The notes under the pieces: generated by a model | What the model saw: only the letters and a program-made list of their open reading frames with translations | Told to the model about the DNA's origin: nothing | Database searches by the model: none | Program-made: the position numbers and the translations under genes | Shown here: positions 21,001 to 58,105 of the stretch, piece by piece | Position numbering within the stretch: position 1 is the first letter of the stretch | Layout of the letters: the number at the start of each line of letters is the position of its first letter | Assembly: GCF_006345805.1 (NCBI RefSeq) | Contig: NC_043021.1 | Location: forward strand, 27,218,001 to 27,282,000 | Direction of reading: 5' to 3' | DNA: 64,000 nucleotides | From: Octopus sinensis | Lineage: Eukaryota

Positions 21001-21163
21001 AAAATCAGAATGTTTTTTTTCCTTAGTGAAAATCGTGCGGGTGTTACTCGAAAATAAGCTAAGATATTTAGAATTCTACTTTCGAAAATAGTTATATGAA
21101 AATCTATGATTAATAACATAAGCGGTCCATGTTCATATCCGTAAGCGGCTGAAGATCTTCAAA
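18083..21163. promoter_or_regulatory. Divergent (head-to-head) intergenic region between NPHP1 and SLC4A1AP
   Basis: The two ATGs face away from each other 3.08 kb apart. TSSs cannot be located from sequence alone. Confidence 0.55.
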
Positions 21164-21772
21164 ATGGATGCTATGTCTGGCAAAACCAAAACAGACGAAG
21201 AAGAAATGGATTTTTGTGACGAAGAGAAGAAACCTGCTGATACAGACACAGCAGATATGAACGACAAAGAAGAAATTGATTTTAAAAAGCCATTAGCGAT
21301 GGTTAAAAGCAACGATGAACAAAACTTACCGACGATCTCTTGCGAGGAACCCGAATGCGAAGAACCTGCTCTCGACTGCCCTTCGTCAGAACCAACAAAC
21401 CTAACAGCCTCGATCCCTTATAAAGAACCTTATTGGAGTGGAATGGCTACGAAACCATATTCGTTCGATGTATTAAAGAACGGCAGCATTATCGACAAAG
21501 TAAATTTGAAGGAGAAACCCTTCTACATATTCGGTCGCCTACCGACCTGTGATGTGACTTTGGAGCATCCGTCTCTCTCGCGCTATCACGCCTGTATACA
21601 ACACTGTGGCACCACATGCGACCGGTATCAGCAGGGCTGGTATTTATACGACCTTGATAGTACACATGGAACTTGGATTAATAAGATACAGGTTCGTCCC
21701 AAGGTTTATCATCGAATCCGTGTGGGTCATGTAATCAAATTTGGCGGCAGCAGTCGATTGTTCATCCTGCAG
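21164..21772 (+). CDS. SLC4A1AP: Kanadaptin exon 1 (FHA domain)
   Basis: PYKEPYWSG...FGRLPTCDVTLEHPSLSRYHA...YDLDSTHGTWINK...GHVIKFGGSSRLFILQ; 609 nt, phase 0; donor CAG|GTTTGT. Confidence 0.95.
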
Positions 21773-24258
21773 GTTTGTTTTCGTTCATTCCTTCGTTTTA
21801 TGACTTGTTTTACTTTCACGCCAGCATGGGATACTGTTTCTCAACCGGGGTCCACATGGCCCTTCGAGGACCATATAAGATTTTGTTAAAATTTATGGGC
21901 AGTAAACCGGTTATATTCCCTCAATACGTAACATTTAAACATATTTTTATACGATTCTTATAATATTTAATCATAAAAATATGAGAGGTTTTAGACATTG
22001 AAACGCAATGAGAGTGTTCCTCCCTGGGTTAAAGTAGGAATTGAAAGGGTCCAAAGGTAAAAAAATTGTTGAGAACCCCTGGGACAGACGAATATTTACA
22101 AAGTTTCTGGTTTTAAGGATGTCTCGAAAGGCTTGGCTGGAGGCCCAACCGTCCGAGTTCTTTAAACTGGACTGCTGCAATAAGTGTGGATCTGATTGGG
22201 GAATATGTTCAATAAAATCATAAACTGTATTTTCTTTTACCCCAAGTCAGGAACTTTTCGGCACCCACCTCGTAACACACATTATTGAGATATTGTTTAC
22301 TTAATAGTTGATATGTTATAAAAGAAAGATCAATAGAAAACGGTTAACTTGTACTTTTGTAGTTTCAAAAAGGAAAGCATATTGACCAGAAATGACGACA
22401 GTGATATCCATAATTCCATAAAAAGAACTGACGAAATCTTGTAATATTATTAACAGAACTCTCATTGTGTTGCATACTCAGACACTTGTATGTATCTTCT
22501 AGCAATAGCTGGAGTATTAGAAACAGCAGCTGAGGTACATCATTCCAACATCTGTGCAACAATGAACATTCCAGAGAAGAAGGCAATTTGCCGCTTGTTT
22601 GGCGATGCATGATAGCCAACATTGTTACATTCTAGCAATGCAATAATCCTGAATGACTACTGAGCTTTACAGACAAGAATCTGTGGTGGTGTTCCTGTGG
22701 ATTCACAATAGATTGTTTACTGTAATTATCAGAGTTCACTAGTTTGTATCCATTACTTCTGGTCAACTTCTTTTCCTTTAATCAAAAACATTCCTTAAAG
22801 TGCACATTTAATAAAAAAAAAAAAAAAAATCAGTGTGAGATGTGACAGACAAACTTACATGGTTGAGGTGATCTTTCATTTTATGATTCAGCAAGTGAAA
22901 CCACTGAATGCTACAGAGGTGTTCATTTGCCAGGAACTTGGTAATGAAATGGTTATAGTTTTCTCTAAAACTGTAAGTTTGTTTTGGAATGTAACAAAAC
23001 CAATGTGTGTGTACAGGCAGACACAAATGAACACACATTTGCTGTGTGTGGGTGTTTGTGAGAAAACTTGATTAATAGGTACATCTAAATGCCCAATGAT
23101 TGATTTGCAAATGAAATCTGAAAGAAATTCAGTATGTTAGATACTTACGTCTTATGCATCTTGAAAGACTTTTTTTCTTACGTTAAGTTAGAGTTATATG
23201 AAATTATGTTATAAGAGAATTACCTCCTCCTCCTCCTCATCATCATTTAATGTCTGTCTTCCATACTGGCATGGGTTGGACGTTTTGACAGAAGCTGGTA
23301 AGGCGGAGGACTGCACCAAGCTCTACCGTCCTTCTGAATGCCAACCACTAGATGCCAGATGCCCTTCCTACTACCAACCACTTTACTGAATGGACTTGAT
23401 GTTTTTTTACATGGCTCCAGCAAGGTCTGTTTTAGCATTGTGTCCATGGTTGGATGCCCTTCCTAATGCCAACCACTTTACAGAGTGGACTGGCTGCTGC
23501 TCCAGCATTGATGTGTTCTGCTTATGAGATTAACACCAGCAAAATTCCTGTAAAATACAGGGCTTGCTTGATGTCCCCTGCATGATGCTGTCTTTCTTTC
23601 TGTTCCTCATCCATTCTACAATATTTGCAAAGCTGCATCGATGTAGTTGTGCTGATTAGGGTTTATTATTGTCTGGTTTGGCAGTTGGCAGCAAGCATGC
23701 TGTCTGCAGTTATAATAATGCAGACCTCCCTGGAGAGACTTTGAGCTGAAAGTGTAACTGCTACTTTTTGGTTTGATGCGTTAAAGAACAGCAGCATTAT
23801 CGACAAAGCAGGAAACCCTGGAAGGATGAAAGGCAAAGATGACCTCAGTGGAATTTGAGGTCGAATACTAATTATGACAGAATTCTTTAACGTACAAAGC
23901 CAGTCATAACTTTGGTAGAGAAAGGAATAGTTAGGAAGTGCCCAGGAGATCATTAAAAGAAAGCAAGAAAATTGTACATTATGCAAACTTGAGAATGGGT
24001 GTCAAGAGAATGTGAAATATGAAAAGAAGAGTAGTACCAGTTGTAACTGGAGCACTTGGGTTGGTGATAAAAAGACTTTTGGAAACACTTTGATACAACT
24101 GGAATCTGTCCCAGCATTATGACACTGGAAGAGACAACTGTTTGGGGACTGGCTAATATCCTGTGAGAAGGTCTGCCTGAGGTTACGTAACTTGGTTGGG
24201 ATTCAGTGAAGTGCTCCACTGTTAATATGATTTGAATAAATATATAAATACACACACA

Positions 24259-30272: not shown

Positions 30273-30275
30273 ACA

Positions 30276-30343
<68 letters not shown>

Positions 30344-30352
30344 TATATATAT
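29994..30352. repeat. (TA)n microsatellite with interspersed GTAC
   Basis: Direct reading of the sequence. Confidence 0.95.
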
Positions 30353-32279: not shown

Positions 32280-32341
<62 letters not shown>

Positions 32342-33560: not shown

Positions 33561-33580
33561 CCACTACTGCGCTATGTATA

Positions 33581-34213
33581 TCTATATATATAAAACTGTA
33601 GTTGTGTGAGTGTCTGTCCCCTTCGATTTAGATTCCTAACTACTCCCACATTTTGCGGTACAGTTTAACCAAATTCGGGTAGCTTATAGTCATGATTCAT
33701 ATCGAGCCCGTCTGAATATTAGCGCGCGTCTACGATGAGTCTACGATTTTAAAAATAATTTAACATCATTTTTTATTCCATTTTAATGCATAATTTTTTG
33801 TGTGTCGATGGCGGCGGAGTTGGCGTCCACGCTCACACCTGCACCTGTGGGGAAGGGAGTGTAAGGAAATCAACGTCGTAATGCGTTGTCAAGGAGACCA
33901 GTGTTCTTTTAGAACAACGACTTCATGGCTTGAAGACACCAAAACAGAAATGGCTAAGAAAGCGTCTACATGAGTCTACAATTTAAAAAAAAATTTACCA
34001 TCGTTTTTTTTCCATTTTAATGCATTTTTTCGCTATTATATAAGGGAAGTAACTCTCTAAAAATGTCTACGATGAGTCAACGATTTAAAAAAAAATTTAC
34101 CATCATAATTTTTCCATTTTAATGCATTTTTGCTATTTTTTGGCTATAACTCTCTAAAAATGCTTATATAGTTATTTCCCTTACAACCCGAGCAACGCCG
34201 GGCGATATGCTAG
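33581..34213 (+). mobile_element. Non-autonomous Helitron (mirror copy on the minus strand at 30354-30987)
   Basis: Starts A|TCTATATATATAAA and ends with the CCCGAGCAACGCCGGG hairpin followed by CTAG|T; no TSD. Confidence 0.8.
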
Positions 34214-34498
34214 TATATATATATGTACATATATATATATATATATGTACATATAATATATATATATATGTATATATATAGATATATATATATAATATAT
34301 AATATATATATGTATATATATGTATATATATATATGTATATATATATATGTATAATATATATATGTATATATAGTATGTTATATGTATCTGTATATATAT
34401 ATATATATAGATATATATATATATATATATATAGAATATATACAAAATATATATATATATACATATATGTATATATAATATAATATATTGTACAATAT

Positions 34499-34530
<32 letters not shown>

Positions 34531-34905
34531 ATATATATATATAGTATATATATATGTATATATATATGTATATATATATTATGTATATATATATATTATA
34601 TATATATGTATATAATAGATATATATATATATATAAGTATATATATATATATATATGTATATTAATAGATATATGTATATATATATATTATGTACTATTA
34701 ATATATATATGTACATATATTATATATATATGTACATATATATATAGATAGTGTAATATATAATAGATATATGTACATATATATAATATATATATATATC
34801 GGTCATATTATACATAGATATATATATATATATATATGTACATATACATATATATATATATATAGATATATATGTACATATATACATATATATATATATA
34901 TGTAC

Positions 34906-34936
<31 letters not shown>

Positions 34937-35107
34937 CATATATACATATATATATATATATGTACATATATACATATATATATATATATATATATGTACA
35001 TATATACATAATATTATATATATGTACATATATAATATATATGTACATATATACATATATATATATATATGTACATATATACATATATTATATATATATA
35101 TATGTAC

Positions 35108-35138
<31 letters not shown>

Positions 35139-35763
35139 CATATATATATATATATATATATGTACATATATACATATTATATATATTATGTACATTATAT
35201 ATATATATATGTACATATAATATATATAGATATGTATATATATATATATATATATCTGTACATTATATATATTATATATAGATATGATGTATATATATAT
35301 GATGTAATATATATATGTATATATATATAATATAGATATATATATATATATATCTAGATATGTAATATATATATATATATGTATATATATAGATATATGT
35401 ACATATATATATATATGTACATATATATATATATATATGACATATATATATATATATGTACATATATATATATATTTATTATATATATATGTACATATAT
35501 ATATATATATGTACATATATATAATATATATATGTACCATATAATATATATATATATATATGATATAGTACATATACATAATATATTATATATATATATA
35601 TGTACATATTACATATATATATATATATGTACATATATACATATATATATATATATATATATGTACATATATACATATATATATATATGTCATTATATAA
35701 TATATATATATATATATATGTACATACATATACATATATATAATATATGTACATATATACATA

Positions 35764-35800
<37 letters not shown>

Positions 35801-35804
35801 GTAC

Positions 35805-35856
<52 letters not shown>

Positions 35857-35990
35857 GTACATATATACATATATATATATATGTACATATATACATATAT
35901 ATATATATAATGTACATATATATATATATACATATAAATATATATATATATAAATATATATATATATTTATGTGTGTGACACCGAAAGAA
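34214..35990. repeat. About 1.8-kb degenerate (TA)n / TATGTACATA microsatellite block
   Basis: Direct reading; source of the spurious YIYI ORFs. Confidence 0.95.
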
Positions 35991-36325
35991 GCCCATTGTG
36001 TATATATATATATATGTATGTATTATTTGTTTGTGCCTGTTTGTCCTCCCCACCATTGCTTGACAACCAATGTTGGTGTGTTTACATCCCTGTTACTTAG
36101 CAGCTCGGCAAAAGAGACTAATAAAATAAGTACTAGGCTTACAAAGAATAAGTCCTGGGGTCGATTTGTTTGACTTAAACCCCTTAAAGTAGTGGTCTAG
36201 CATAGGCACAGTTAGATGGTTGAAACAAGTAAAAGATATATATATTATTTTATATATATATATATATATATATAATATATTGTTGTATTTACTTGTTTCT
36301 GTCATTGGACTGTGGCCATGCTGGA

Positions 36326-43799: not shown

Positions 43800-46166
43800 G
43801 TTAGTATTATATTTGTATTTGAAATTGCCATTTACCTGCATTCATTCATTCATCATCATCATCATCGTCGTTTAATGTCTGCTTTCCATGCTGGCATGGG
43901 TTGGACGGTTTGACTGAGGGCTGGTGAGCCATAAGGCTGCACCAGGCTCCAGTCTGATCTGGCAAAGTTTCTACAGCTGGATGCCCTTCCTAACGCCAAC
44001 CACCCCATGAGTGTACTGGGTGCTTTAATGTGCCAATGGCACAAAGGCCAGTCAGGCAGTACTAACATCGACCAGGCTCAAATGGTGCTTTTTACATGCC
44101 CCCTGCACAGGAGCCAATCAGGCAATGCTGGCAGTGACCACACTCAAACGGTGCTTTTAATGTTCCACTGGCACGTGTGCCAGTCAGGTGGTACTGTCAT
44201 TGGCCATGACAATGATTTCACTTGCCTTAACAGATCTTCGCTAGTGGAGATCATTGCCCAATGTTTGAAGGGTACTCCTAAATGGGCTGGTTATGCAGCA
44301 CTTGCATAGGCCACGGTTACGGTCTCACTTGGCTTGCTGGGTCTTCTCAAGCACAGCATATCTCCATGGGTCTCAGTCACTTGTCAGGTCTCGATCTGTC
44401 CCTAGTCTTGTAGGGTCAGTTACTCAGTTTCTATGGCATATAAGTGATGAAGCTCTTAACGTTGCCCCTGAATGGGACATCAGTCTGTTGCAGGGTCACA
44501 CATTTACAACAGAATAGGTTTGGAGCAGCGTGAGATGAAATGTTTTGCTGAAGAGCACAATGCACTACCTGATCCAGGAATTGAAACCACAATCTTGCAA
44601 TTGTGAGTGCAACACTTTAACCACTGGGCCATGTGCCTTCACTACCTGCATTCATTACTTGTAAGCATATTGTGTTAAGTGGTTGGCATCAGGAAGGGCA
44701 TCCAGCCATGGAAATCATGCCTCAACAAACAGCTGCAGTCTGGACAGCTTCCTGCCAGCCAGGTTCATGTCCAACTGTCCACTGTCCATGCTGGCATGAC
44801 CATCACTGAGTATGTGAGCTGCTACAGGATGTCTGCCATTGAGGAGCCCAAAGCGGGGCAAAGGTCATGTGGTCTGGCAGTTCTGGTGGGGCTGTAGGGG
44901 ACAATTCTTGTCTGTCAGCGATATGAATACAAGTGCCTTTAGGCACCACACGTCCATTGGAGAAGTTCTCTCAAGGTAAATAACGCAGTATTCAGTGTTC
45001 TAACAAAAACATCCACATTAAGTTGGACATAGAGATTGCCCTTTGGTACTGATACTGCTTCCATTACTCTTTTACTTGTTTCAGTCATTTGACTGTAACC
45101 ATTCTGGAGCATTGCCTTTAGTCAAACAAATCGACCACCAGAACTTATTCTTTGTAAGCCTAGTACTTATTCTCTCAGTCTCTTTTGCCAAACCGCTAAG
45201 TTACAGGAACGTAAACACCAGCATCGGTTGTCGAGCGATGTTGGGGGGACAAACACAGACACACAAACGTGTACACACACACACACACACTCTAACACAC
45301 ACACACACTCACACACACACACACACACACACACATAAATATATATATATATATATATTTGGCTTCCTTCACTTTCTGTCAACCAAATCCACTCACATGG
45401 CTTTGGTCGGCCCGAGGCTATAGTAGAAGACAGTTGCCCAAGGTGCCGTGCAGTGGGACTGAACCCAGAACCATGTTGGTTGGTAAGCAAGCTACTTACC
45501 ACACAGCCACTCTTGCACCTACTATTATTTAGTTTTTAGCAAGCATGCTAGCTATTAGTGACATCAGTGCCTGAAAAGACACTGAAATCTTATATATTGA
45601 GACAGTGAGATTCAGCTGTTCTGTCACTACTGGGCGTCTGCCACTGAGAAGCCCAAAGTTGGCATTATATGATCTGGCAGTTCTGGCAGCTGTAGCTGTA
45701 GTTTCTTGTCTGCCAATGATATAGATATGAGTGCTTGTATGCACCACACGTCCATATCAGAGTTCCTCCCAAAGTAAACAACAAGATATTCAGTGTTCTC
45801 ACAAAAACGTCTGCATTCAATAACTGCTCCATCTTCAGTGTGTCTATTTCATTTCTTTTCCACTTTCATCATGGCTGTTCCAACCCTTGTGTTTCACTCC
45901 AGTGTAACTTCTGCCCTCTTGTGTAACTATACTCCCCCCATGGCTCACCATCGTGATTACATTACTTCCTGTAACCATTCCACCCTCAGAGTAAGCATTC
46001 CAGCCCTGGTGTGATCATTTCACTCCTACTTTGATGATTCTGCCCCACTTTCAGTTTAGTTATTCGAACATTCATCATGATTCCATCCCGTCTGAACCTC
46101 ATCTGTTACATCCAGCATGAAGAATCTGCATTGATTGAATTTAATGTTGTCTCCTCTTTGCATCAG

Positions 46167-46309
46167 GCTTCCCATAGACGATGCCAGTGGACGTCCAATC
46201 ATAGCTGAAGCTACTGTGTCGGGTAAGAAGAAAGAATCTGTCGAAGCCTGTGCCCTTGAGGCCTGTCGCATCCTTGACCGACATGGAGTGCTGAGGGCTG
46301 CCACTCATG
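46167..46309 (+). CDS. SLC4A1AP: Kanadaptin exon 5 (dsRBM-like region)
   Basis: [43 protein letters not shown]; CATCAG acceptor, GTAAAT donor; 143 nt. Confidence 0.93.
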
Positions 46310-46515
46310 GTAAATATATGGGTTTTTATTTCTTTCTTCATCATCACCACCATCATCTTTGTTTTACTGTCCACTTGTCTATGCTCAAATGGGTCAGACG
46401 GAATTTGTTGAGGTGGATTTTCTGCAGAAGGATGCACTTCCTGTCACCAACTCTCACCTGTTTCCCAGCAAGGTAATATTTTTCCCCATATCCTTAAAGT
46501 CAGAACTTTTAAGCA

Positions 46516-46559
<44 letters not shown>

Positions 46560-46659
46560 GTAACAGAAAAGAGGAATTTCGATTATCCCCACGTGGTGTG
46601 TTGTAATGTATATAAGAAATTAAAAATGGAAAATACGCACACTTACATAGTTTTAATAT

Positions 46660-49252
46660 GATTTTTAATATATCGACCGGTTTTGCTATCGCTATTCATA
46701 ATATTATGTTTTACTTATTTGAATATATATTTTTTCTTAAGAAGAAATTTGGTCCATGTTGTGTGTGATGAGATCCACGAGTGAATGACTTCATAAGTAG
46801 ATAGATAAAGGGAGGTAATTGGTTGTCATTATTGTTATTGTTGTGGGTAAGGGAGATAACTGTTCAGCTTTCAGTAATAGGGAAATATATATGTGTACAG
46901 ACAGAGACAAGTTTCAAAAACCTTGTTTAGTTGGGGATTTATGTACAGTGATGTAATCGTGAATTGAAATATGTAAAAAAGATAAAAGTTGGTTGTGCAT
47001 GCATATTAAGACGTGTTTTGTATTTTTCAATGAAAAAAGTTTCTTTATTTAAACGTTCTAGTTGAGAGATTGCGTCTTTGCACTGGTAGAAAGGGAAGAC
47101 TGTGAAATTTGGTTTGATGCTATCTGCACATTTTTCTATATGTTCACTGAGAGGAATTTGTTTGTATTGCGGGAAACGGATTTGCTCTTTATGTAGAGTG
47201 GTTCTCTTTCTCAAGGTCATACTTGTTTGTCCAATACAGCGGTGTCCGCAACCTGAGCAGGTTATTACATAAATCAAGTTCTCAGAGGCACAAGTGAAAC
47301 TAGTTTTAATTGTAAACCTCTGTCCTTGTTTGAAAAGGAAGTCCGATCCTTCAAGCAGGTTGGGGTAGGTTCCACAGTTCGGGTGTCCACATTTTTCAAC
47401 CGTTGGTTTCGTGGTTGTTTTGTAAAGCTTCGCGTGTGTTAGTAGTCTCTTTAGCGATTTGTCTTGTTTTTTGCATTTGATGAGTTTGTGTGTTTTCAGG
47501 ATGTCGTTCAATTTTGGATCTCTAGTTAGTAAAGGGAGAGTTTGCACAATAGTGTTGTATGCCTCACTGTTTCTGGGGTTGTGTGTTGATATAAATAGTA
47601 ATGTTTTGAGTTGAGGTGCGTTGTTATGTTTTGTTGTTCTTAGTGTTTTTGTGTCTAATTGTTTGGTACGTTTAATTCCCTCGTCGATAAGTGAGGGTGG
47701 ATATTGTCTTTCAATAAGTGTTGTTTTGAGGTCTTGAAGACGAAGGTCCCGAGTTGTTCTATCAGACACTATTGTGCAGATCCTTTTTGTTAAGTTAAAA
47801 GGGATGTTTATTTTTATGTGTTTCGGGTGGCATGAGTTAAAGAGAAGATATTGTTTTGAATCAGTTGGTTTATAATAAATGTCAGTTATGATTTCATTGT
47901 TGACTTTTTTTATCATGATGTCTAAAAATGGGAGTTTTTCTTTGTTATATTCCATTGTGAATTGAATGTTACTATTTATGTCATTTAGTGTTGTTTTGTA
48001 ATCCAAAAGTTTGTCGATGTTCTTCTTCCAGCTGATAAAGCAGTCATCCAGGTATCGCTTCCAATTTTCTCTTATCTAGAGGTAAAATGGCTAACCATAT
48101 TTCTGGAGTGATACTTCATATAAGGTGAATTCAAAATAACCCAGTATTAGGTTCGCAAGAACAGGAGCTGCTTTCGTCCCCATCGCAATTCCGCAATTTC
48201 TGACGATAGTATGTGTCATCAAATAGGAAATAATTGTTCTGAAGTATAAATTTTAAGGATTCAATAATAAAGATCCGGTTTATGCGTTCCGGGAGAGCTT
48301 TGGGGTAATTTTCCAACCAGAATTTAATTGCTTTTATTCCATAGTCATGGCGGATGTTGGTGTAAAAATTGATAACGTCGAGGGTGACCAATATTGCCTC
48401 TTCATTAATCGTTTTTGGTAGGTGTTCTAGCATGTCTAAATCATCCCTAATGAAGCTTTTGATGTATTTCAGTAGGATGTCTAGAAAATTGCTCAGTCGG
48501 TGGGTTTCACAGGCCGGCCCAGCTACAATGGATCTTAAAGTCAAGTCTTCTGGCGTTTGGATGTTTATATATTTGCCTGGAGATTGTTTGCAGGCTTCAT
48601 TGATTATCTTGTTCTTGTGTATTTTAGGGAGGCCGTAAAAAAGACTGGGTTTACATTTGAAGTTTGTGATACAGTCTGTTTCTTTTTCTGTCAGGCCTTT
48701 TCCATGCAGAAGAATTAAGGATGCAAGATTTTTCATGGTTTTTTGTTGTCTATAGTTTATCACTTTTTCGTAGAAGGCCTTGTTTTCTAGTAGGGATAGT
48801 ACTAGTTTTTTATAGTGTTCTGTGTCCATCAGGACTACAGCACTTCCTTTGTCAGCTTCTTTAATTGTCAGGTCTGTGTCGTTTTTTAGTTCAATCAGAT
48901 TTTTCCATTCTAGATTGTTGAGGTTCGGATTAATTTTTCGTTTATTGGATGTGTAGGCAAAATTTTGGATATGGTTGCAGTAGTCATCCAGTGTTTTATT
49001 CCTACCCTTATGTGGAAGGTAATTACTTCTGTTTTTGACCAGTGATTCATCTTCGTTGTCGTAGTCAGTGCTTCTGCGAGTCGTAGTTTTCTGCAGAATT
49101 CCGAAATATTGTCTTTAATTTCATTGTGGTTAGCTCTTTGTGGGGTTGGGGTGAACTTTAAACCTTTGGCTCGTATATTGATTTTTGTTATGGATAGAGT
49201 TTTCTTTGATAAGTTAATCACTTTGGGTTTCTCCTGTATGTTTTGTTCCAAC

Positions 49253-49254
<2 letters not shown>
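46660..49254 (-). mobile_element. Penelope-like element (RT plus GIY-YIG endonuclease), frameshifted
   Basis: KGLKFTPTP; FYGLPKIHK; LVTLDV..FYTNI; KRYLDDCFI; LPFLDI; YYKPTD; SCHPKH; C-terminal LIYVITCSGCGHRCIGQT..LRKR (GIY-YIG-like). Confidence 0.9.
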
Positions 49255-49299
<45 letters not shown>

Positions 49300-50169
49300 A
49301 GGTGACTTTCGAGTGCTACTCGTAACATGTAACCCAGTACAACCTGTTGCATGGTCGGGTCGTCGGCGATTAAACCGGCAACCCCACCAAGCTTGCTTGG
49401 TGAGGAGGGTGTTTATTGGACACCCTGCAGGATGAAAAACAAAACCCGTCAAAGGGCGGAGGAACTCTTGAGAGTCAACGGCCATCCAATAAATGCCTTA
49501 AGGCTTTATCATGTTCGGGGACATAGAAATAATCGGACTGAATACCCGATCGTGCGGTTAAACCATTGGGAGTGAAGGACTCCTAGCCTTTGTTAGGGCA
49601 CCCTTCTAAGAGAAGGTAACTCAGGTAACTGGGATAACTCCGACATAAAACCTGCGGCTCAGTGGTTACCGATGATGTTGACTTGTTCTTCTTTTCGGAT
49701 TATGGCTGCTGTTGCTTAGTGAGTGGGATTGACTCAGTGCACAGCCTTTCCTCACTTAAAAAAAATCTTCTTGCACAGGCGTTGCATGATAACAACATTG
49801 ATTAAGCTTCGTGCAATGGCCATACTCGATAACGAGGGGGCAGCCACCATATATATGTATATATATGTTTATATACTTATTTTTATTTTCCTAAAATGAC
49901 TCTCCTCAGACACAACAGAATATGCTTCAACACACAAACTCATAAAGAATCTTGCAAACCAAATCCCAAAACGAAATATATATATCATCATCATCATCAT
50001 CGTTTAGCGTCCGCTTTCCGTGCTAGCATGGGTTGGACGGGTCAACTGGGGTCTGTGAAGCTGGAAGGCTTCATCAGGCCCAGTCAGATCTGGCAGTGTT
50101 TCTACGGCTGGATGCCCTTCCTAACGCCAAAATATATATTGTATACAATATATATTGTATATATACACA

Positions 50170-50372
50170 TGAGGAGGTGCTGAAAAGTTCCTGGTTTTGG
50201 GTAAGAGAAAATACAGGAGGGTCAGTTAATTATGATTTTATTCAACATGTTCCTCTCTCAGATTCACATACTTCAGTTTTTTCTGAACCCTGTAAAATAA
50301 CTCAGAACGTTGGGTTTCCAACTACGCTTTTCGCGATCCCCGTAATGCCAGGGACTTTTCAGTACCCCCTGG
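50170..50372. mobile_element. Tc1/mariner-type MITE
   Basis: TIRs TGAGGAGGTGCTGAAAAGTTCCTGG / CCAGGGACTTTTCAGTACCCCCTGG; TA follows the right end. Confidence 0.65.
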
Positions 50373-51249
50373 TATATATGCACACACACACAGATACACA
50401 CACATCGAGGTACATATGCATTTACAGACATGTTTATATCAGCATGAAGTGAAGGTGGCCAGCTAGTGGAATTGTTGGTACAGTGGACAAAACGCTTAGT
50501 ATCACTTCATCTAACTTTATATTCTGAGTTCAAATTCCACCAAAGTCGACTTTACCTTTCATTCTTTTGGAGTCAATAAAATAAATACCAGTTGTTCCCT
50601 GGGGTCGGCGAGATTGACTTACTCTCTCCTCCAAAATTGCTGGCCTTGTGCCAAAATGTAAAACCTGTATCAGCATATGGTTGTGTAATCAGTCCATTCA
50701 AATAAGCAATCCTCGCCTGAGTTACCTCCCCTGACAATAATGTTCACTTTGCGTTTTGGTGTCTGAACAAGAACAATAAAAATGACACCAAAGTGCTAAA
50801 AGTCCATTGGGGGCAGTGCTCCAGCAGGGCTGCAGACTAATGGCTAAAAGTTATTAAAACAAGGGGATGGGGTTTTGATTAAGGTTAAGGGATCCATATT
50901 TATTGTACTTTGCTCCAGGTCACTGTGTAGTCAGGAAGATGTACCTCAAATTGTTGTGGTACGTAAGTTAGACTGGAAGCTTATCTTCAGGTACCGACTG
51001 GAATCTACCATTTTTTATAACACCAGAGAAACTGGTGCTCAGAGCTGGTCGACCTCTGACGGACACATTTAGGTTGTATTCTTCAACAATAGGTATAAGG
51101 TTCATGGTTAGGATGGGTAGATCTCAGTATTTGACTTATCTTGTTTTTTTATAAACTTAGAAAAAAGATGAAAGGCATCATTGGCCATGGTAGGATTTGA
51201 ACTCAGAACATAAAAGGCTGGGCATATTACAGGCGCATAATTAAAAAGA

Positions 51250-51635
51250 GACTTTGATGTTTACTACCTGGGGTAGAGTCAAAGTGATGTTTACTACATG
51301 GAATAGTATCAGTGTAGTGTTTACTGTTTAGAATCGATATTTACTATCTGGAGTAGAGTCAAAGTAATGTTTAGTATATGGAACAGAATCAGTATAATGT
51401 TTACTATTGAGAAACGATGTTTACTATCTGGGGTAAAGTCAAAATGATGTTTACTGTTTGTGGTATTGTCAGTGTGATGTTTACTATCTGGAGTAAAATG
51501 AATGTGATGTTTACTGTCCGGGGTTGAGTCAGTATGATATAGGTCTTTGATGTTTACTATTCATGATACGCCTATGATGTTTACTGTGTGCGATATGTTT
51601 ACTATCTGTGGTAAATGTCTGTTCTGTTTACTATG
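51250..51635. repeat. About 30-bp minisatellite (core GATGTTTACTA)
   Basis: Around 14 degenerate units with 12 exact TGTTTAC cores counted. Confidence 0.85.
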
Positions 51636-51762
51636 TATTCAATGCTATAATTATTCTGCCTGTTCTTGCTAAGCCAGTCTCATGGTAATTTTAGAGATAA
51701 TTTTAGGAAGCATATTGTTGTACTTGGGGATGGTCAGATTTTGCCAGTTCACACACACACAT

Positions 51763-51796
<34 letters not shown>

Positions 51797-51848
51797 CCAA
51801 CCAAACCATGCTAGCATGGAAAGCGGACGTTAAATGATGATGATAATG

Positions 51849-51899
<51 letters not shown>

Positions 51900-52074
51900 A
51901 TCATCATCCTCATACATCCGTTTTCCATGCTAGCATGGGTTGGATGGTTTGACTGGGTTCTGGGAAGCCAGGAGGTTGCACCAGGCCCCAATCTGATCAG
52001 ACAGTGTTTCTACAGCTGGGTGCCCTTCCTAATGCCGACCACTCTGAATATATCACAAACAAAATTTTTTTACT

Positions 52075-54120
52075 AACCCATCATTAAGGCTTATCTGCCC
52101 TTCTAGCTCTGACATCGGTATCCTTAGTAAAAGTATACTAGATAAATATATTCCTAATTTAATTAAAACGGACTAATTCGTTTGAAGTAGTTGACTGGTT
52201 TAGGTCTATTAACAGTAAGGTGAGTACTAAGTTTATCCAGTTTGATATTTCCAATTTTTAATCATCTATCAATCCAATAGTACTTAGTAAGGCACTTTGG
52301 CTTGCTCATAACAAAGCTGGTCTCAGCCGAGAAGAAATTAATGTTGTGTTGGCAGCCAGAAGATCTATTATTAAATTTGATAAGTTGTGGGTCCGTAAAG
52401 ACACACCAGATAGTTTCGATATACCGATGAGAAGTTCTGATTCAGCACAGATAGCTGATTTGGTCTGTATATATATTCTTTTTGAAATGGCAGAAGAGTT
52501 CCCTAACATTTATGGAGGTCTATATCACGATGATTATTTACTTGACCTCCAAAATGTTTCCAACCAAAAGGTACAAAAAATTAAGAATAGTTTAGTTAAT
52601 TTTTTAGTAGAATGGGCTTAAAAATCGTTTTTGATGACGATATGATGAAGGCCAACTTTTTAGATATTATGCTTAATTTACACAGTGACTCTTACTTCCC
52701 ATATCGTAAACCGTTGACCAATCTTAAGTACATTAGCAAATTTAGTTATCATCCTAGAGCAATTACTAAGAACTTAGTTAAGAATATTTCATTTAGATTA
52801 TCTAAATTATCTGCTAATGCTGATATTTTCAATGATAATGCTGAATTCTATAACTCTGCCTTAATTAAAGCAGGTTATACAGAGAAAATTTTCTACATTG
52901 CTCAGTCTAATTGTAAATTCAATAATATAGATAAGATTTCTAGTCGTAAAAGAATTATTGATAACAAACATAACTTATGCACCGATACAAAGCGAATGAA
53001 GGCAGATAACCCTTATTTAATCCCCTATTATCATTCTAAAAGTAAATATAACACCTTCAAAAATAATTACGCTATGAATACTAGTAAAAGTATTTGGTTA
53101 ATAATTCCTTATGGGAGACAAATTAAATCTAATCTCCCACTGCTGTTTCGTCAAGCTATTGTTAGGAATTTTCCAAAAAATTTTAGGTATTACTCTATTA
53201 TCAATTCACATACGGTTAGGATCGGTTTTTCAAACACAAAAAAATCTCTTACAAATTATCTCTTCACATAATAACAAACTGTTAAATATTAATACATTTA
53301 CTAATACTAACATTAATTTAGCTAATACCATCCAACCCACTAGAAATATTAATAACAAGGTTATTGTATCTGAAGTCAATTCCAGTAGAATTAAGTTTAT
53401 GTCAAGAAACTCTAAGATTAAAAATTCTATATACCAGTGTATAATCAGTACTCGTAATAAAGTATGATTTTACATTGGAAGCACATCGTTAGAGTTATCT
53501 AAAAGAATTTCTATCCATTACTCAACATTTAGGGATAGAAATAAACGGAATAGTACCGGTCTCAGCAAACTGATTTGGGATTTAAAAGACCACAATGAAC
53601 AATTTCATTTAGAATGGTTGATCCTCTCAATTTCGATACCATTTGACAAAGGCAAGGAATTCTGTCTTCTCTGCAATTCTGAGCTATTTTTCATTATTTT
53701 TTCTAAAAATACTCTAGTAAACACGGTTATAGAGCGAGCATACAGATATAAGCATTGGCAAAAACATACATTTAGTGCATATAAGTAGTCTCTATCATTA
53801 TATATAATTTAAACTTTAATTTCCTTTATATTTAACATTCACTATTAATATCCCTACTCTTTCTGTTAGCTACTTAGGACGTTATATCATATAACGTTGT
53901 TTTAAACAATATTAATAGAGTTCTGTCAATCGCTATACAAATCCATCATTTTTGCTAAAATGTCTTATTGACGAGTTTCGTTTTTTTCACTTTCCTGAAG
54001 AGAAGATTGCATTGTTTGTACCATTTATTCTTTTGAATAGTATCAGTGGAATTTTCGAAACATGTGTCGAAAGTAAACATATTTGATTTACACCTGCGTT
54101 AAACTCCATTTATTTATTCA
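52075..54120 (+). mobile_element. Second Penelope-like element (degraded RT, GIY-YIG and a 3' pseudo-LTR with hammerhead)
   Basis: LRLICPSSSDIG..SK.ILDK; SDSAQIADLV; LYHDD; FLDIML; PYRKP; SYHP; IYQC...YIGSTS..KRI.....F; NSTGLSKLIWDLK. Confidence 0.85.
53989..54074 (+). ncRNA. Canonical type I hammerhead ribozyme
   Basis: Stem I ACTTTC/GAAAGT; CTGAAGA (53995-54001); stem II GAAGATT...AATTTTC with a G10.1-C11.1 pair; GAAA (54057-54060); stem III AC-ATGT-GT; GUC triplet with predicted cleavage after 54068. Confidence 0.85.
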
Positions 54121-54157
54121 TATATATATATAAGGCCAACGAGGGTACGGATGCTGC

Positions 54158-54418
54158 TATATATATTATATGTAGAAAAATACAAACTGGGACAAGAACG
54201 TAAAACATTTAGAAGACAATACAAAAAACACGGACGGGACATTCGGAGCCTTCAATCTTCAGTCAAGAACCGGATCATCCTAGCCGAAATTGCTAGGATG
54301 ATCCGGTTCTTGAATGAAGATTGAAGGCTCCGAATGTCCCGTCCGTGTTTTTTGTATTGTCTTCTAAATGTTTTACGTTCTTGTCCCAGTTTGTATTTTT
54401 CTACATATAATATATATA
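54158..54418. repeat. 261-bp palindrome (127-bp arms, 7-nt spacer)
   Basis: 54158-54284 versus 54292-54418, one mismatch noted; both ends lie in (TA)n. Confidence 0.9.
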
Positions 54419-54739
54419 TATATATATATATTTGGTCTTCACTTCAGTCTTATTATTATTATTTTAGTTTCTTTGTCAAAGCCTCTTCACTTTACACACC
54501 CTGTGACCTCTTCAGTAACTCTCAATCCCATGTGTCTCTTGTTGGGTAGTCATGTGTCAGGCATTCAAACAAGGTCGCCTGCCCACTTGACCTGTGCTCT
54601 CTCCTCAGCAGCATGTAAAATGCTTGTCAGATCCATATCTGGAATCTTGTCTTGTCAGATGGTTACTGACACATGGCGGCTTGGAAAAATAGACGTTCAA
54701 ATGATGATGGTAATCTGATATTGTTCTGCTGTTTTACAG

Positions 54740-54900
54740 AAAGTCGTAAACGTAAGAAGAAAAACTGGGAAGAAAACGATTTCTATGACAGTGATGAAGA
54801 CACGTTCCTTGACCGGACGGGGACCATTGAGAAGAAACGTGAACAAAGGATGAAGAAGGCTGGCAAACTGGACGACAAAGCTGAAACATATGACTCTCTG
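54740..54900 (+). CDS. SLC4A1AP: Kanadaptin exon 6
   Basis: SRKRKKKNWEENDFYDSDEDTFLDRTGTIEKKREQRMKKAGK...ETYDSL; TTACAG acceptor, GTAAAT donor; 161 nt. Confidence 0.95.
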
Positions 54901-56114
54901 GTAAATATCTTTTTGAATCTCTCAGAAAAATTTGTTTTCGTATTTAATTTGTTAGGATTTAAATCAGGGATTTCTGGCCAAAATATTCTGCTTTTTTTTT
55001 ATGTTCAAACTGACTGGATCGGACTCACACCTATCCTACAATGTTAGTCTAGAAAATTTATTGTCACATAATCGAAATCTCAAAGCTACGAGAAAATGCA
55101 TTGTTAATTCAAAATAATGTGAATGAATCGAAATGTTACATTTGGATCTCAATGTTCAACAGTTAAAGGTTAAATAGATCAAAAGCAAACTAGTTGTTAA
55201 CTGAATCATCATTATCATCATCATCATCTTGCCCCCCCCCACCAGCATTACCCTTTTGTCATCATCTTCCTCATCATCACCATTATCTACTTCACTACCA
55301 CCACTACCACTGCCACCATCTAGATCATAATCATCATCACCATCATCTCCATCATCATTTGACACGCTTCTGTATTTGCAAAGGTTGCCTAGTTTGACAG
55401 ATTCTAATAAGCCAGAGGACTGGATCATGCACTTATTATTACTTTGGCATTATTTCCACAGCTCCATGCTCTTCCTGACACCAACCACTTTACAGAGTGT
55501 ATTGGGTGTTCTTTTTTTGTTGTATCACTTGCACTAGAGATAATTCTCCCACAACTTGCAAAAGCTAAGGACGGGCTTACAGTGGCTCTTTGGGAGAATG
55601 GAACAATGTGCAATGGTTCTTGGCAGAAGGAAGAGGGACGTAGTAACAGGAAATGATGTACAAGTATAACAAAGAAGAGGGAAGAGATCAATGAGAAAAA
55701 GAGGGATAGATTTGAAAAGGGGATTGGGAAGATAGGGGTCTACGGTTATCTAACATTATAAGGGGTCACTTTGAGTAGAAGGTATGAGGAACAGGTGAGA
55801 ATGAAGATAAAATATATTTATTATCTTTTATTTTTTTACATACACATATATCTTTACAAACATTTATATATATGTATATATACACGCGTATATATTCTTT
55901 CTTTTCTTTTTTTTCTTTTACTTGTTTCAGTCATTTGACTGCGGCCATGCTGGAGCACCGCCTTTAGTCGAGCAAAGCGACCCCAGGACTTATTCTTTGT
56001 AAGCCCAGTACTTATTCTATCGGTCTCTTTTTGCCGAACCGCTAAGTGACGGGGACGTAAACACACCAGCATCGGTTGTCAAGCAATGCTAGTGGGACAA
56101 ACACAGACACACAA

Positions 56115-56157
<43 letters not shown>

Positions 56158-56371
56158 ATTATATATATATATATATATATACGACAGGCTTCTTTCAGTT
56201 TCCGTCTACCAAATCCACTCACAAGGCTTTGGTTGGCCCGAGGCTATAGTAGAAGACACTTGCCCAAGATGCCACGCAGTGGGACTGAACCCGGAACCAT
56301 GTGGTTGGTTAGCAAGCTACTTACCACACAGCCACTCCTGTACCTATATATATATATATATATATATTATA

Positions 56372-58105
56372 TCATCATCATCATCGTTTAATGTCCCTTT
56401 TCCATGCTAGCATGGGTTGGATGGTTTGACCGGGGTCTGGGAAGCCAGGAGGCTGCACCAGGCTCCAGCCTGAATTGGCAATGTTTCTACAGCTGGATGC
56501 CCTTCCTAATGCCAACCACTCCGAGAATGTAGTGGGTGCTTTTTACGTGCCACTGGCACAGGGGCCAGAGGAGGCTGGCAAATGGCCACGATTGGTTGGT
56601 GCTTTTATGTGTTACCAACACGGACGCCAGTCAGGCGGCGCTGGCATCTGCCATGTTCGGACGGTGCTTTTAACATGTCACCGGCACGGGTATCTTAACT
56701 ACAATTTCCATTTGATTTTCATTTTGATGTTGGTGTTAATTTACTTGACTCAATAGGTCTCCTCAAGAACAGAGGGTCACTCTACGATCCAAGGTTAGCA
56801 CAGTAGGCCATCCTGCGAGCCATGAATTCACTTCATTTGTCGGGTCTTCAAAGTCACAGCATATCTCCAGAAGTCTCGGTCTTTTGTCATAGCCTCTGTG
56901 AAGCTCAATGTTCGAAGGTCATGCTTGACCACCTCGTCCCATGTCTTCCTAGATCTACCTCTACCCCGGATTCCTTCAACTGTTTGGGAGTGGCACTTCT
57001 TCACATATCTCTCCTCATTCATCCGCAGTACATGACCATACCAACGCAGTCGTCTCCTGCACGCTGCATCTGATGCTTCTTATGCCCAACATTACTCTCA
57101 GGGCACTTACACTCTGTTGTGCATGGACACTGACATTACACATCCAGCGGATCATGCTAGCTTCATTTCTTTTGAGCCTATGCATGTCCTCTGCAGTCAT
57201 GGCCCATGTTTGACTGCCGTGAAGCATGGCAGTTCGCACACATGCGTCGTACAATCTACCTTTCACTCTGAGCAAGAGACCCTTTGTTGCCAGTAGGGGA
57301 AGAAGCTTCCTAAACTTTGCCCAGGCTATTCTTATTCTAGTGGTAACACTCTCTGAGCATCCACCCCGGCTACTAACTTGGTCACCTAGGTAGCAGAAAC
57401 TATCAACTACTAGTTTCTCCCCCAGGAGTGTAATGGAATCTGTTTTCTGAGTATCAATGGTGTCTATTGCCCCTGTGCATCAACCGCACATAAAAGCTAT
57501 CTTCCCGGTTAATTTTTCTTTGATGTTGCTGCACCTCTTATGTGTCCATAGCTTACACTGGGTACATCTTATGGAGTTCCTACCTACACCTTTTCTACAG
57601 ATCGAGCAGGGCCAACTACCTGAAGGGGTGTGTGGTGAGTTTGCCTTCCAGCTTACTATAACTTTGGTCTTTGCTACATTGACTCTAAGGCCTTTTGATT
57701 CTAAACCTAGCTTCCACACACGAAATTTCTTCTCTAGTTCTGGTAGTGATTCTGCTACGAGGGCTAGGTCATCAGCATAGAGGAACTCCCAGGGGCAACC
57801 CGTCTTCAATTTCTCTGTTATTGCCTGGAGGACTATGATGAATAGAAGGGGATTGAGACCTGAGCCTTGGTGGACGCCAACTTCTACCTGGAATTCTTCA
57901 CTGTATTCGTTGCCAATCCTAACTACAAGGGAGCTGTCTATATGGATAGCTGGTCCTTCTACTGGGTCAACATTTGGCAGGCTCTCCTCCTCCCATTCAT
58001 TCTCCACATTCAGCAGTCTTTCATAGTGGCTTCTCCAAGCCTCTTTCTTTTCAGAATCACAAAAAGCAAGTGCACCATCATCCATTCGAACACATTTCTC
58101 TCCTG
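56372..58105 (-). mobile_element. RTE LINE fragment with an internal deletion in the RT domain
   Basis: Same family as 26782-29985; reads ...PVEGPAIHIDSSLV directly into VRIGNEYSEEF...; YADD present. Confidence 0.85.

What the first reader, a model, noticed from the sequence alone, without database searches (positions are those of the whole stretch)
53989..54074. Fully canonical hammerhead ribozyme in the sense strand of kanadaptin intron 5
All catalytic nucleotides, the G10.1-C11.1 pair, a 6-bp stem I and the GUC triplet are intact although the parent PLE ORF is badly decayed. Stem II is unusually long, with further pairings CATTG/CAGTG and TATTC/GAATA. The motif lies about 670 nt upstream of the exon 6 acceptor, so activity would cut host pre-mRNA. 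The 2-bp stem III with a self-complementary ACAUGUGU suggests dimer-dependent cleavage, which could make it a concentration-sensitive or tolerated element. PLE hammerheads are known; retention or a host role is inference.
Basis: partly seen in the sequence, partly recalled or inferred. Interest (0 to 1): 0.7.

Follow-up and report, generated by a model that had tools for sequence, protein, structure and literature searches.

The report
Retrotransposon hammerhead ribozyme relic in intron
The motif is a real, complete hammerhead ribozyme sequence, but it is the standard ribozyme carried at the 3' end of a dead Penelope-like retrotransposon that landed in a kanadaptin intron, and nothing found here suggests the host uses it.

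Summary
Observation confirmed. Window 53989-54074 (+) holds a type I hammerhead with every core nucleotide, G10.1-C11.1, a 6-bp stem I, a 55-nt stem II hairpin, a 2-bp stem III and GUC. None of 300 shuffled windows gave such a motif.

It lies 200 nt after the stop of a 5'-truncated, frameshifted Penelope-like element (PLE; RT plus GIY-YIG, 52054-54133, + strand) and about 60 nt before that element's 3' end.

Two Octopus sinensis copies of the same PLE family carry an 86-nt homologue at the same place, with 5 of 21 pairs changed on both sides. Half of 80 distant PLE relatives carry a hammerhead on the ORF strand beside the ORF. A covariance model built only from those relatives finds this site and nothing else in the window (E about 0.002). 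Rfam finds none of them.

The host gene is kanadaptin on the + strand (FHA exon versus PDB 4H87, E 7e-42). The next exon starts 666 nt downstream.

There is no second hammerhead in the intron to form a dimer. An intact core is what neutral decay would leave at this age. PLE hammerheads, their weak stem III and dimer dependence are published.

Verdict: an ordinary new member of a known kind. A host role is unsupported and could not be tested here.

The parts
53989..54074 (+). Type I hammerhead ribozyme motif, 86 nt. Stem I 53989-53994 / 54069-54074. Core CUGAAGA 53995-54001. Stem II hairpin 54002-54056. GAAA 54057-54060. Stem III and loop 54060-54067. C17 at 54068, which is the predicted cleavage site.
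   Evidence: Sequence. Descriptor scan. Fold. 0 of 300 shuffled windows. PLE-hammerhead covariance model R1: 20.5 bits, E=0.0024 and E=3.4e-4 with filters off over the intron. Covariation with two O. sinensis homologues.
52054..54133 (+). 5'-truncated, decayed Penelope-like element (PLE). RT and thumb about 52054-53270. GIY-YIG endonuclease about 53429-53785 (stop 53786-53788). Conserved 3' module 53965-54133, which contains the hammerhead and ends in a TA-rich tail.
   Evidence: Exhaustive HMMER search: 1869 relatives, best an O. sinensis protein at 60% identity. tblastn of full-length relatives maps their residues from about 185 to the C-terminus onto 52054-53785 in several frames. Alignment shows RT YxDD, NFLD thumb, GIY...YIG and CxLCxxE motifs. 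3' homology to L001 and L002 ends at 54133.
46310..54739 (+). Host intron of the kanadaptin-like gene that contains the PLE fragment. It is flanked by exon 46167-46309 (dsRBD-like segment) and exon 54740-54900.
   Evidence: Splice signals read. Gene identity comes from the FHA exon. Identity of the two flanking exons rests on my recollection of human kanadaptin, not on a tool result.
21122..21886 (+). Open frame containing the first coding exon of kanadaptin, with the FHA domain.
   Evidence: PDB 4H87 'Kanadaptin', E=6.7e-42. Pfam FHA, 67.4 bits.
54120..54132 (.). (TA)n run at the 3' junction of the PLE fragment.
   Evidence: Sequence. Homology to sister copies ends here. PLEs are reported to insert preferentially in microsatellites and AT-rich DNA (PMC8557442, PMC11167929).

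Best explanation
The motif is the hammerhead ribozyme that canonical endonuclease-encoding Penelope-like retrotransposons carry in their terminal repeat (pLTR), on the ORF strand.

How it got here: a 5'-truncated copy of an octopus PLE family inserted, in sense orientation, into an 8.4-kb intron of kanadaptin. Its ORF has since decayed. The 86-nt ribozyme module near its 3' end still has an intact core simply because it is a small mutational target.

How it works in a live element: the ribozyme sits in both flanking repeats of tandem PLE units. Its stem III is too short (2 bp) to hold the active fold alone. Two copies pair through their palindromic stem III and loop to form a double hammerhead, or the element's own protein assists.

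Why it is probably inert here: it is a lone copy with no partner in the intron, an AU-rich stem I and a mutated loop III. It is therefore expected to cleave kanadaptin pre-mRNA little or not at all, which is why it is tolerated.

Shown: motif, PLE membership, position, strand, family conservation, absence of a partner. Inferred: low activity and neutrality.
For: 1. Complete core and three helices. 0 of 300 shuffled windows match.

2. The motif is contiguous with a PLE ORF on the same strand, 200 nt after its stop and about 60 nt before the end of homology to sister copies.

3. Two O. sinensis copies of the same family have an 86-nt homologue at the same place (L002 7407-7492, L001 8165-8250).
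- In L001 it lies between two tandem PLE units, 270 nt before the next ORF.
- Core plus stems I and III are 28/33 identical.
- Stem II is only 23/53 identical yet still pairs.
- 5 of 21 pairs changed on both sides. 92% of cells are paired, against at most 50% when partners are slid.

4. Among 80 distant PLE relatives from metagenomes, 40 carry a hammerhead.
- 48 hits are on the ORF strand and 1 on the other.
- 23 lie 80-251 nt after the ORF match and 14 lie about 100-300 nt before it.
- The coral-metagenome relative L004 has one 77 nt after its ORF.

5. A covariance model built only from those metagenomic hammerheads finds three sites in 92 kb: the window's and the two octopus ones. With filters off it finds no second site in or around the intron.

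6. Nothing marks the motif as protected.
- CpG o/e is 0.72 in the element and 0.92 (2 CpGs) in the motif.
- It has a G.G mismatch and G.U pairs where sister copies have Watson-Crick pairs.
- Loop III is AUGU where the sisters have palindromic AUAU. This makes the productive dimer register (-6.0 kcal/mol) no better than a shifted one, and an extended wrong-register duplex reaches -11.4.

7. Literature.
- PLE hammerheads sit in the pLTRs, have a large helix II and a short palindromic helix III. A single motif shows no detectable cleavage and dimers cleave weakly (PMC4209133).
- Canonical hammerheads are universal in C-terminal-EN PLEs (PMC8557442).
- A Poseidon PLE hammerhead cleaved only with its protein, and no RNA-seq ends were found at the cut site (PMC11167929).
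Against: - No experiment was done, so inactivity is inferred.
- The core is perfect, including C11.1, which both O. sinensis copies have lost (U in one, G in the other). This copy is thus the best-preserved of the three seen.
- Monomeric stems I and II fold with probability above 0.9 in isolation.
- Two pre-mRNAs, or other transcripts of the same PLE family, could in principle supply a partner in trans.
- I had no subfamily consensus and no orthologous locus, so the age of the insertion and relative conservation at host level are not measured.
- Rfam's curated hammerhead models do not score the motif. They also miss every PLE hammerhead found here.
Confidence: 0.82

Rival explanations
1. Weakly active passenger. 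The lone hammerhead does cleave a fraction of kanadaptin pre-mRNA, either as a poor monomer or by pairing in trans with other transcripts of the same PLE family. The loss is small enough to be tolerated, so it has no adaptive role.
For: Perfect core and a well-formed stem I and II in isolation. Sense orientation in a transcribed intron. The 8-nt stem III segment can self-pair at -6.0 kcal/mol. Dimeric PLE hammerheads do show some cleavage in vitro (PMC4209133).
Against: Single PLE motifs showed no detectable cleavage (PMC4209133). The PAc hammerhead needed its protein (PMC11167929). No partner within the intron. A competing non-productive dimer register is predicted. Stem III pairing probability is 0.05 or less.
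Confidence: 0.12
2. Host-exapted intronic ribozyme. The hammerhead has been retained by selection to modulate kanadaptin pre-mRNA processing, for example through concentration-dependent dimer cleavage. This would be analogous to the conserved intronic hammerheads of amniotes.
For: Only circumstantial. The core is intact while the ORF is broken. C11.1 is kept where two sister copies lost it. It is in sense orientation, 666 nt before an exon.
Against: An intact 13-15 nt core is the expected neutral outcome at the few-percent decay implied by the ORF lesions. Stem and loop III changes go in the weakening direction. CpG retention is no different from the rest of the element. There is no partner copy. 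A preprint reports HHR-bearing retrozymes to be depleted from introns, which points to cost rather than benefit (bioRxiv 10.64898/2026.07.22.740005).
Confidence: 0.04
3. Chance occurrence of the hammerhead consensus in AT-rich intronic DNA.
For: The loose descriptor does give chance hits at 0.047 per window. A second, weak hit at 38951-39053 looks like one.
Against: 0 of 300 shuffles for the observed quality. Homologous motifs in sister PLE copies with covariation. Correct position and strand relative to the PLE ORF. Covariance-model hit.
Confidence: 0.01

Closest known systems
Minimal or dimeric hammerheads of Penelope-like elements (Cervera & de la Pena 2014, PMC4209133; also Lunse, Weinberg & Breaker 2017, recalled from memory and not read here)
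   Same: Located in the PLE terminal repeat on the ORF strand. Type I topology. Enlarged helix II. Helix III of 1-3 bp with a small palindromic loop. Usually found as single, dispersed, 5'-truncated copies. Expected to need a dimer.
   Different: Helix II here is a 55-nt compound hairpin (about 13 bp plus a distal stem-loop), against 3-11 bp in the 29 relatives I collected and 7-8 bp in the paper. Loop III (AUGU) is no longer a perfect palindrome in the productive register.
Poseidon PAc hammerhead of Anolis carolinensis (Frangieh et al. 2024, PMC11167929)
   Same: A PLE-borne hammerhead in the pLTR. Cleavage there depended on the element's protein and was dispensable for insertion in vitro. 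That supports the view that a lone copy in host RNA is inert.
   Different: In PAc the ribozyme overlaps the ORF start. In the octopus family it lies about 200-600 nt after the ORF stop and about 270 nt before the next unit's ORF.
Newt satellite 2 and Schistosoma Sm-alpha type I hammerheads (double-hammerhead model of Forster et al. 1988, as cited in PMC4209133)
   Same: Unstable stem III. Activity comes through pairing of two copies.
   Different: Those occur in tandem arrays that supply the partner. Here there is no tandem array.
Non-LTR retrozymes of animals (PMC7229834; bioRxiv 10.64898/2026.07.22.740005)
   Same: Type I hammerheads related to PLE pLTRs.
   Different: Retrozymes are short non-coding tandem repeats giving circular RNAs. 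This motif is physically continuous with a PLE ORF and is not repeated.
Conserved intronic hammerheads of amniotes (HH9, HH10; de la Pena & Garcia-Robles 2010, from memory)
   Same: Sense-strand hammerhead inside an intron of a protein-coding gene.
   Different: Those are stable monomers, ultraconserved across species and recognised by their Rfam models. This one is a transposon relic with a 2-bp stem III, gets no Rfam hit, and its conservation is untested.

Membership tests
Hammerhead ribozyme (type I) | Catalytic core C3-U4-G5-A6-N7-G8-A9, G12-A13-A14, A15.1-U16.1 and H17 | tested here: met
   CUGAAGA 53995-54001, GAAA 54057-54060, U16.1 at 54067, C17 at 54068.
Hammerhead ribozyme (type I) | Three helices around the core with G10.1-C11.1 closing helix II; open end at helix I | tested here: met
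   Helix I is 6 bp. Helix II is 7 bp, then 5 bp, then a distal hairpin. Helix III is only 2 bp. Helix III pairing probability in the monomer is 0.05 or less.
Hammerhead ribozyme (type I) | Helices supported by covariation among homologues | tested here: met
   Three octopus copies: 5 of 21 pairs changed on both sides, 92% of cells paired against at most 50% for slid partners. Only two independent lineages, so support is moderate.
Hammerhead ribozyme (type I) | Match to a curated Rfam hammerhead model (RF00163, RF00008, RF02275-7) | tested here: not met
   No hammerhead family at gathering score, or at E<=10 in 261 nt. The same models also miss the hammerheads of L001, L002 and L004, so this reflects the models' reach.
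Hammerhead ribozyme (type I) | Site-specific self-cleavage giving 2',3'-cyclic phosphate and 5'-OH | not testable with these tools
   Needs in vitro transcription and cleavage assays.
PLE-associated (pLTR) hammerhead | Lies in the terminal repeat or 3' region of a PLE, on the ORF strand | tested here: met
   200 nt after the ORF stop and about 60 nt before the element's end. Same arrangement in L001, L002, L004 and 40 of 80 metagenomic relatives, with 48 hits on the ORF strand and 1 on the other.
PLE-associated (pLTR) hammerhead | Significant score against a model trained on hammerheads of other PLEs | tested here: met
   Model R1 (18 metagenomic PLE hammerheads): 20.5 bits, E=0.0024. It is the only hit in the window. 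Calibration is rough.
PLE-associated (pLTR) hammerhead | Short helix III with palindromic loop allowing a double hammerhead | tested here: inconclusive
   Helix III is 2 bp. ACAUGUGU self-pairs only with two G.U pairs (-6.0), equal to a shifted non-productive register. Sister copies have a perfect ACAUAUGU (-7.0 against -0.4).
PLE-associated (pLTR) hammerhead | Second copy nearby (other pLTR or tandem unit) to form the dimer | tested here: not met
   No second hit in the window or the intron, even with filters off. No repeat of the region. The element is 5'-truncated.
Penelope-like element, canonical C-terminal EN type | PLE-type reverse transcriptase | tested here: met
   Window 52600-53268 has 1869 relatives (349 at E<=1e-10). 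The pieces align to the RT core and thumb of 700-800 aa relatives (LYRDDGL against LYHDDYL; NFLDV). Pfam RVT_1 itself is silent on the window pieces and reaches only 20 bits, below its cutoff of 29.6, in relative P0090.
Penelope-like element, canonical C-terminal EN type | C-terminal GIY-YIG endonuclease fused to the RT | tested here: met
   SIY...(stop)...YIG at 53429-53480, then the R..H and CxLCxxE blocks, align with relatives. Pfam GIY-YIG is above its cutoff in relative P0180 (24.0 against 22.6 bits) and sub-threshold in P0057. No Pfam hit in the decayed window piece itself.
Penelope-like element, canonical C-terminal EN type | pLTRs or partial tandem structure; frequent 5' truncation | tested here: inconclusive
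   The window copy is 5'-truncated at about 52054 (relative residue about 185) and has no upstream repeat. The tandem arrangement is seen in sister locus L001.
Host-conserved (exapted) intronic ribozyme | Presence and constraint at the orthologous position in related species | not testable with these tools
   No cephalopod genome collection can be searched by DNA here. Exact-protein look-ups of three window ORFs found nothing.
Non-LTR retrozyme | Short non-coding tandem repeats, each carrying a hammerhead | tested here: not met
   No tandem array other than microsatellites in 51500-55500. The region is unique in the window.

The most novel reading that the evidence does not exclude
The lone, sense-oriented hammerhead has been kept by the host as a conditional pre-mRNA cleavage element. 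It would cut kanadaptin transcripts only when nascent RNA density, or transcripts of the same PLE family, are high enough to supply a dimer partner. That would couple expression of a nuclear FHA protein to transposon or transcriptional activity.
Probability: 0.03. Interest if true: 0.7.

Novelty: new member of a known kind. Interest (0 to 1): 0.15.

Why it matters
As it stands this is routine annotation: one more PLE hammerhead. PLE hammerheads number in the thousands in some animal genomes (PMC4209133).

Two points are mildly useful.

- **Family variant.** This octopus PLE family carries a hammerhead with a 55-nt helix II that Rfam's models do not detect. Rfam-based counts of cephalopod hammerheads (for example 235 'hammerhead 1' loci in the giant squid, PMC6962438) probably miss PLE-type copies.
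- **Natural test case.** A sense-strand, core-intact hammerhead in an intron of a conserved gene could be used to ask whether dimer-dependent ribozymes are harmless passengers in host transcripts.

Only if orthologous conservation or in vivo cleavage were shown would it become a case of ribozyme exaptation in an invertebrate.

Tried and rejected
- **Rfam.** A scan of the whole window at gathering score, and of 53900-54160 at E<=10, gave no hammerhead family. The weak snoRNA and miRNA hits there are noise. Rfam also missed the hammerheads in L001, L002 and L004, so its silence says little.
- **Pfam.** The window's PLE pieces gave nothing meaningful.
- **Word-indexed protein searches.** The search with 52600-53268 found nothing, and the one with the L002 GIY-YIG part found only P0181. 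The exhaustive HMMER search was needed.
- **Exact-protein look-ups.** Three window ORFs (52612-53268, 53111-53464, 54673-55044) were tried to locate the source assembly or an orthologous contig. None is on record.
- **PDB search with the exon 54740-54900 peptide.** Only chance hits. Kanadaptin identity therefore rests on the FHA exon.
- **In-context folding.** Stem I probability falls to 0 with flanks of 50 nt or more. The same happens for several bona fide PLE hammerheads and not for others, so I do not use it as evidence.
- **Second descriptor hit at 38951-39053.** It has G10.1.U11.1, GUU and an irregular stem II. It is not found by model R1, has no PLE coding remnant nearby and is within chance expectation. 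I treat it as chance.
- **CpG retention as a sign of selection.** No signal.
- **Not attempted.** I did not assign the PLE to a named clade (Neptune, Penelope/Poseidon or Nematis).
Full report
**1. The observation**

Window 53989-54074 (+) reads ACTTTC-CTGAAGA-G...C-GAAA-C-ATGT-G-T-C-GAAAGT.
- Stem I is 6 bp (53989-53994 with 54069-54074).
- The core is CUGAAGA (53995-54001), then G12-A13-A14 and A15.1 (54057-54060).
- G10.1 (54002) pairs with C11.1 (54056).
- Stem III has two pairs (A15.1-U16.1, C15.2-G16.2) around an AUGU loop.
- The triplet is GUC, with C17 at 54068.
- Stem II is a 55-nt compound hairpin: GAAGATT/AATTTTC with one G-U, a G.G mismatch, CATTG/CAGTG with one U-G, then TATTC/GAATA around a TTTT loop.

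ViennaRNA's MFE and centroid structures reproduce stems I and II with an open core.

My descriptor script found this site and one weak second site in the whole window, on both strands. In 300 dinucleotide-preserving shuffles of the window, a loose descriptor gave 0.047 hits per window. A descriptor as strict as the observed motif gave none.

Rfam 15 reports no hammerhead family here, either at gathering score or at E<=10 in a 261-nt slice.

**2. What surrounds it**

On the + strand just upstream lie open pieces that together read as the C-terminal three quarters of a Penelope-like element (PLE) protein:
- an RT core with LYHDDYL;
- a thumb with ANFLDIML...PYRKP;
- a WLIIPY block;
- then SIYQC...(stop)...FYIGST...R..H...CLLCNSE.

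Pfam does not recognise the decayed pieces, and a word-indexed search found nothing. An exhaustive HMMER search with 52600-53268 found 1869 relatives, 349 of them at E<=1e-10. The best is XP_029650703.1 of Octopus sinensis (60% identity, misnamed 'myb-like protein I').

Full-length relatives of 700-800 aa align with the window pieces across RT, thumb, a WFNPP block, GIY-YIG and a C-terminal CxLCxxEK block.
- Pfam GIY-YIG passes its cutoff in relative P0180.
- It is sub-threshold in P0057.
- RVT_1 is sub-threshold in P0090.

tblastn of those relatives places their residues from about 185 to the end on window 52054-53785, in several frames. The copy is therefore 5'-truncated and carries at least three frameshifts and two in-frame stops (52259, 53465).

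Homology of the non-coding 3' end to sister copies runs from 53965 to 54133 and stops in a TA-rich run. The hammerhead thus sits 200 nt after the ORF stop and about 60 nt before the element's 3' end.

No other copy of this element or of the hammerhead region exists in the window. There is no tandem array.

**3. The host gene**

The + strand frame 21122-21886 matches the FHA domain of human kanadaptin (PDB 4H87, E=6.7e-42) and Pfam FHA.

Downstream + strand exons at 46167-46309 and 54740-54900 have clean splice signals. Their peptides match what I remember of human kanadaptin. That recollection is a lead, not a test.

The hammerhead is therefore in the sense strand of the 8430-nt intron 46310-54739. 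Its end lies 666 nt before the next exon. I did not verify that this is intron 5.

**4. Relatives of the ribozyme**

Two O. sinensis loci were fetched through the protein hits. Both carry an exactly 86-nt homologue.
- L002 7407-7492 was found by the descriptor.
- L001 8165-8250 was found by the covariance model.
- In L001 the motif lies between two tandem PLE units, about 600 nt after one ORF and 270 nt before the next. This is the classical pLTR arrangement (PMC8557442).

Against these copies the window's element is about 62-66% identical everywhere: coding region, ribozyme and 3' tail. Within the ribozyme the pattern is uneven.
- Core plus stems I and III are 28/33 identical.
- Stem II is 23/53 identical yet still pairs.
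- On the three-sequence alignment, 5 of 21 pairs changed on both sides, and 92% of cells are paired against at most 50% when partners are slid.

This is selection on structure in the lineage of active elements. It says nothing about selection in the host.

**5. Distant relatives**

A scan of metagenome contigs with a PLE protein alignment returned 80 loci with near full-length ORFs.
- The descriptor found 49 hammerheads in 40 of them: 48 on the ORF strand and 1 on the other.
- 23 lie 80-251 nt after the ORF match and 14 lie about 100-300 nt before it.
- A coral-metagenome relative (L004) has one 77 nt after its ORF.

From 18 of these I built covariance model R1. R1 contains no octopus sequence. 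Searching the window and L001-L003 (92 kb, both strands), it reported exactly three hits:

| Locus | E-value |
|---|---|
| L002 | 5e-5 |
| Window 53991-54072 | 0.0024 |
| L001 | 0.008 |

With filters off over 44000-57000, the window site scores 20.5 bits (E=3.4e-4) and the next best scores 10.6 bits. The window motif therefore passes a membership test for PLE hammerheads, and no partner hammerhead exists in the intron.

Rfam misses all of these, so its silence reflects the models rather than the motif.

**6. How it works, and whether it works here**

Published work places PLE hammerheads in both pLTRs and describes an enlarged helix II and a very short, palindromic helix III. It reports no detectable cleavage for a single motif and weak cleavage for dimers or trimers (PMC4209133). 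For a Poseidon PLE, cleavage needed the element's protein, was dispensable for insertion in vitro, and left no RNA-seq ends at the cut site (PMC11167929).

The window copy fits that type.
- Stem III pairing probability in the monomer is 0.05 or less.
- The dimer interface differs from the sister copies. They have ACAUAUGU, a perfect 8-bp palindrome (-7.0 kcal/mol, against -0.4 for a shifted register).
- The window has ACAUGUGU, where the productive register (-6.0, two G.U pairs) ties with a register shifted by 2 nt.
- With neighbouring core nucleotides included, a non-productive duplex reaches -11.4.

These are thermodynamic predictions only. In-context folding of stem I was uninformative, because bona fide PLE hammerheads behave both ways.

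From my own knowledge (Fong et al. 2009), only fast ribozymes placed in introns disturb co-transcriptional splicing. A slow or inactive one would be tolerated.

**7. Is it 'retained'?**

Five disabling lesions in about 1.7 kb of ORF suggest only a few percent of neutral change since insertion. This is a rough inference. At 3%, the chance that 13-15 core positions all escape is about 0.6.

The motif also shows possible wear: the G.G mismatch, G.U pairs where sisters have G-C or A-U, and the loop III change. Its two CpGs are not exceptional, because the whole element has a CpG o/e of 0.72-0.74, above the window's 0.53.

The window copy does keep C11.1, where the O. sinensis copies have U or G. 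One position in three copies is not evidence of constraint.

A preprint reports that hammerhead-bearing retrozymes are depleted from introns in vertebrates (bioRxiv 10.64898/2026.07.22.740005). If anything this points to cost rather than benefit.

Orthologous loci could not be fetched. The DNA collections are prokaryotic, viral or metagenomic, and exact-protein look-ups of window ORFs found nothing.

**8. Verdict**

The element is a new member of a well-described kind. The long helix II is a trait of this octopus PLE family rather than of this copy.

A host function is neither supported nor strictly excluded. I put it at about 3-4%. Interest is low.

Noticed in passing
window 38951-39053 (+): Second hit of my loose hammerhead descriptor. 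It has CUGAAGA, GAAA, GUU and a 6-bp stem I, but G10.1.U11.1 and an irregular, wobble-rich stem II. Model R1 does not find it, no PLE coding remnant lies nearby, and it is within chance expectation (0.047 per window).
   Followed up: partly
window 47110-48030 (-): A second, more divergent PLE coding remnant on the opposite strand, in the same kanadaptin intron (tblastn P0180 E=3e-6, P0021 E=9e-4). No hammerhead was detected beside it.
   Followed up: partly
window 54158-54200 and 54376-54418: Perfect 43-bp inverted repeat bracketing about 175 nt, immediately after the PLE's 3' end. A related arm occurs at 14777-14822 (87%). It looks like a small MITE or foldback element.
   Followed up: no
window 30561-31437 and 33130-34011: Three adjoining inverted-repeat arm pairs of 203-262 nt at 100% complementarity, flanking microsatellite-rich DNA and a mariner-like HTH peptide (33116-33442). 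This is either a very young palindromic duplication or an assembly artefact.
   Followed up: no
window 25374-25648 and 25688-25962: 275-nt inverted repeat, 99% complementary, with arms only 39 nt apart: a long hairpin or foldback.
   Followed up: no
window 10460-14142 (+): Long open pieces with protease, RT, RNase H and integrase-like sequence (for example 'YxDD'-type RT and 'HCSLEQ' blocks). Judged by eye to be a Ty3/gypsy-type LTR retrotransposon upstream of kanadaptin exon 1.
   Followed up: no
window 57015-58085 (-): Non-LTR retrotransposon RT fragment (Pfam RVT_1 5e-10) followed by a PHD/C1-like zinc finger. A 91% identical 300-nt copy lies at 27864-28163.
   Followed up: no
window 34001-36000: Block of 12% G+C made of (TA)n/(TATG)n-type microsatellites. 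Similar arrays occur at 30000-30400 and 31500-33000.
   Followed up: no
L001 5053-9488 (O. sinensis CM016882.1): Nearly intact PLE unit: a 667-aa ORF, then a 161-aa GIY-YIG ORF after one frame break, followed in tandem by a second unit starting at its true N-terminus. Part of it is annotated in GenBank as 'myb-like protein I'. The L002 copy is annotated 'probable serine/threonine-protein kinase dyrk1'. Both names are annotation errors for transposon ORFs.
   Followed up: partly
L001, L002 and window PLE copies, linker before GIY-YIG: The octopus family lacks the CNC...CP...C cysteine motif that all eight metagenomic relatives reaching this linker have just upstream of the GIY-YIG domain. In its place, L002 (the only octopus copy in that alignment) has a long Asn/Ser-rich low-complexity insert.
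   Followed up: no
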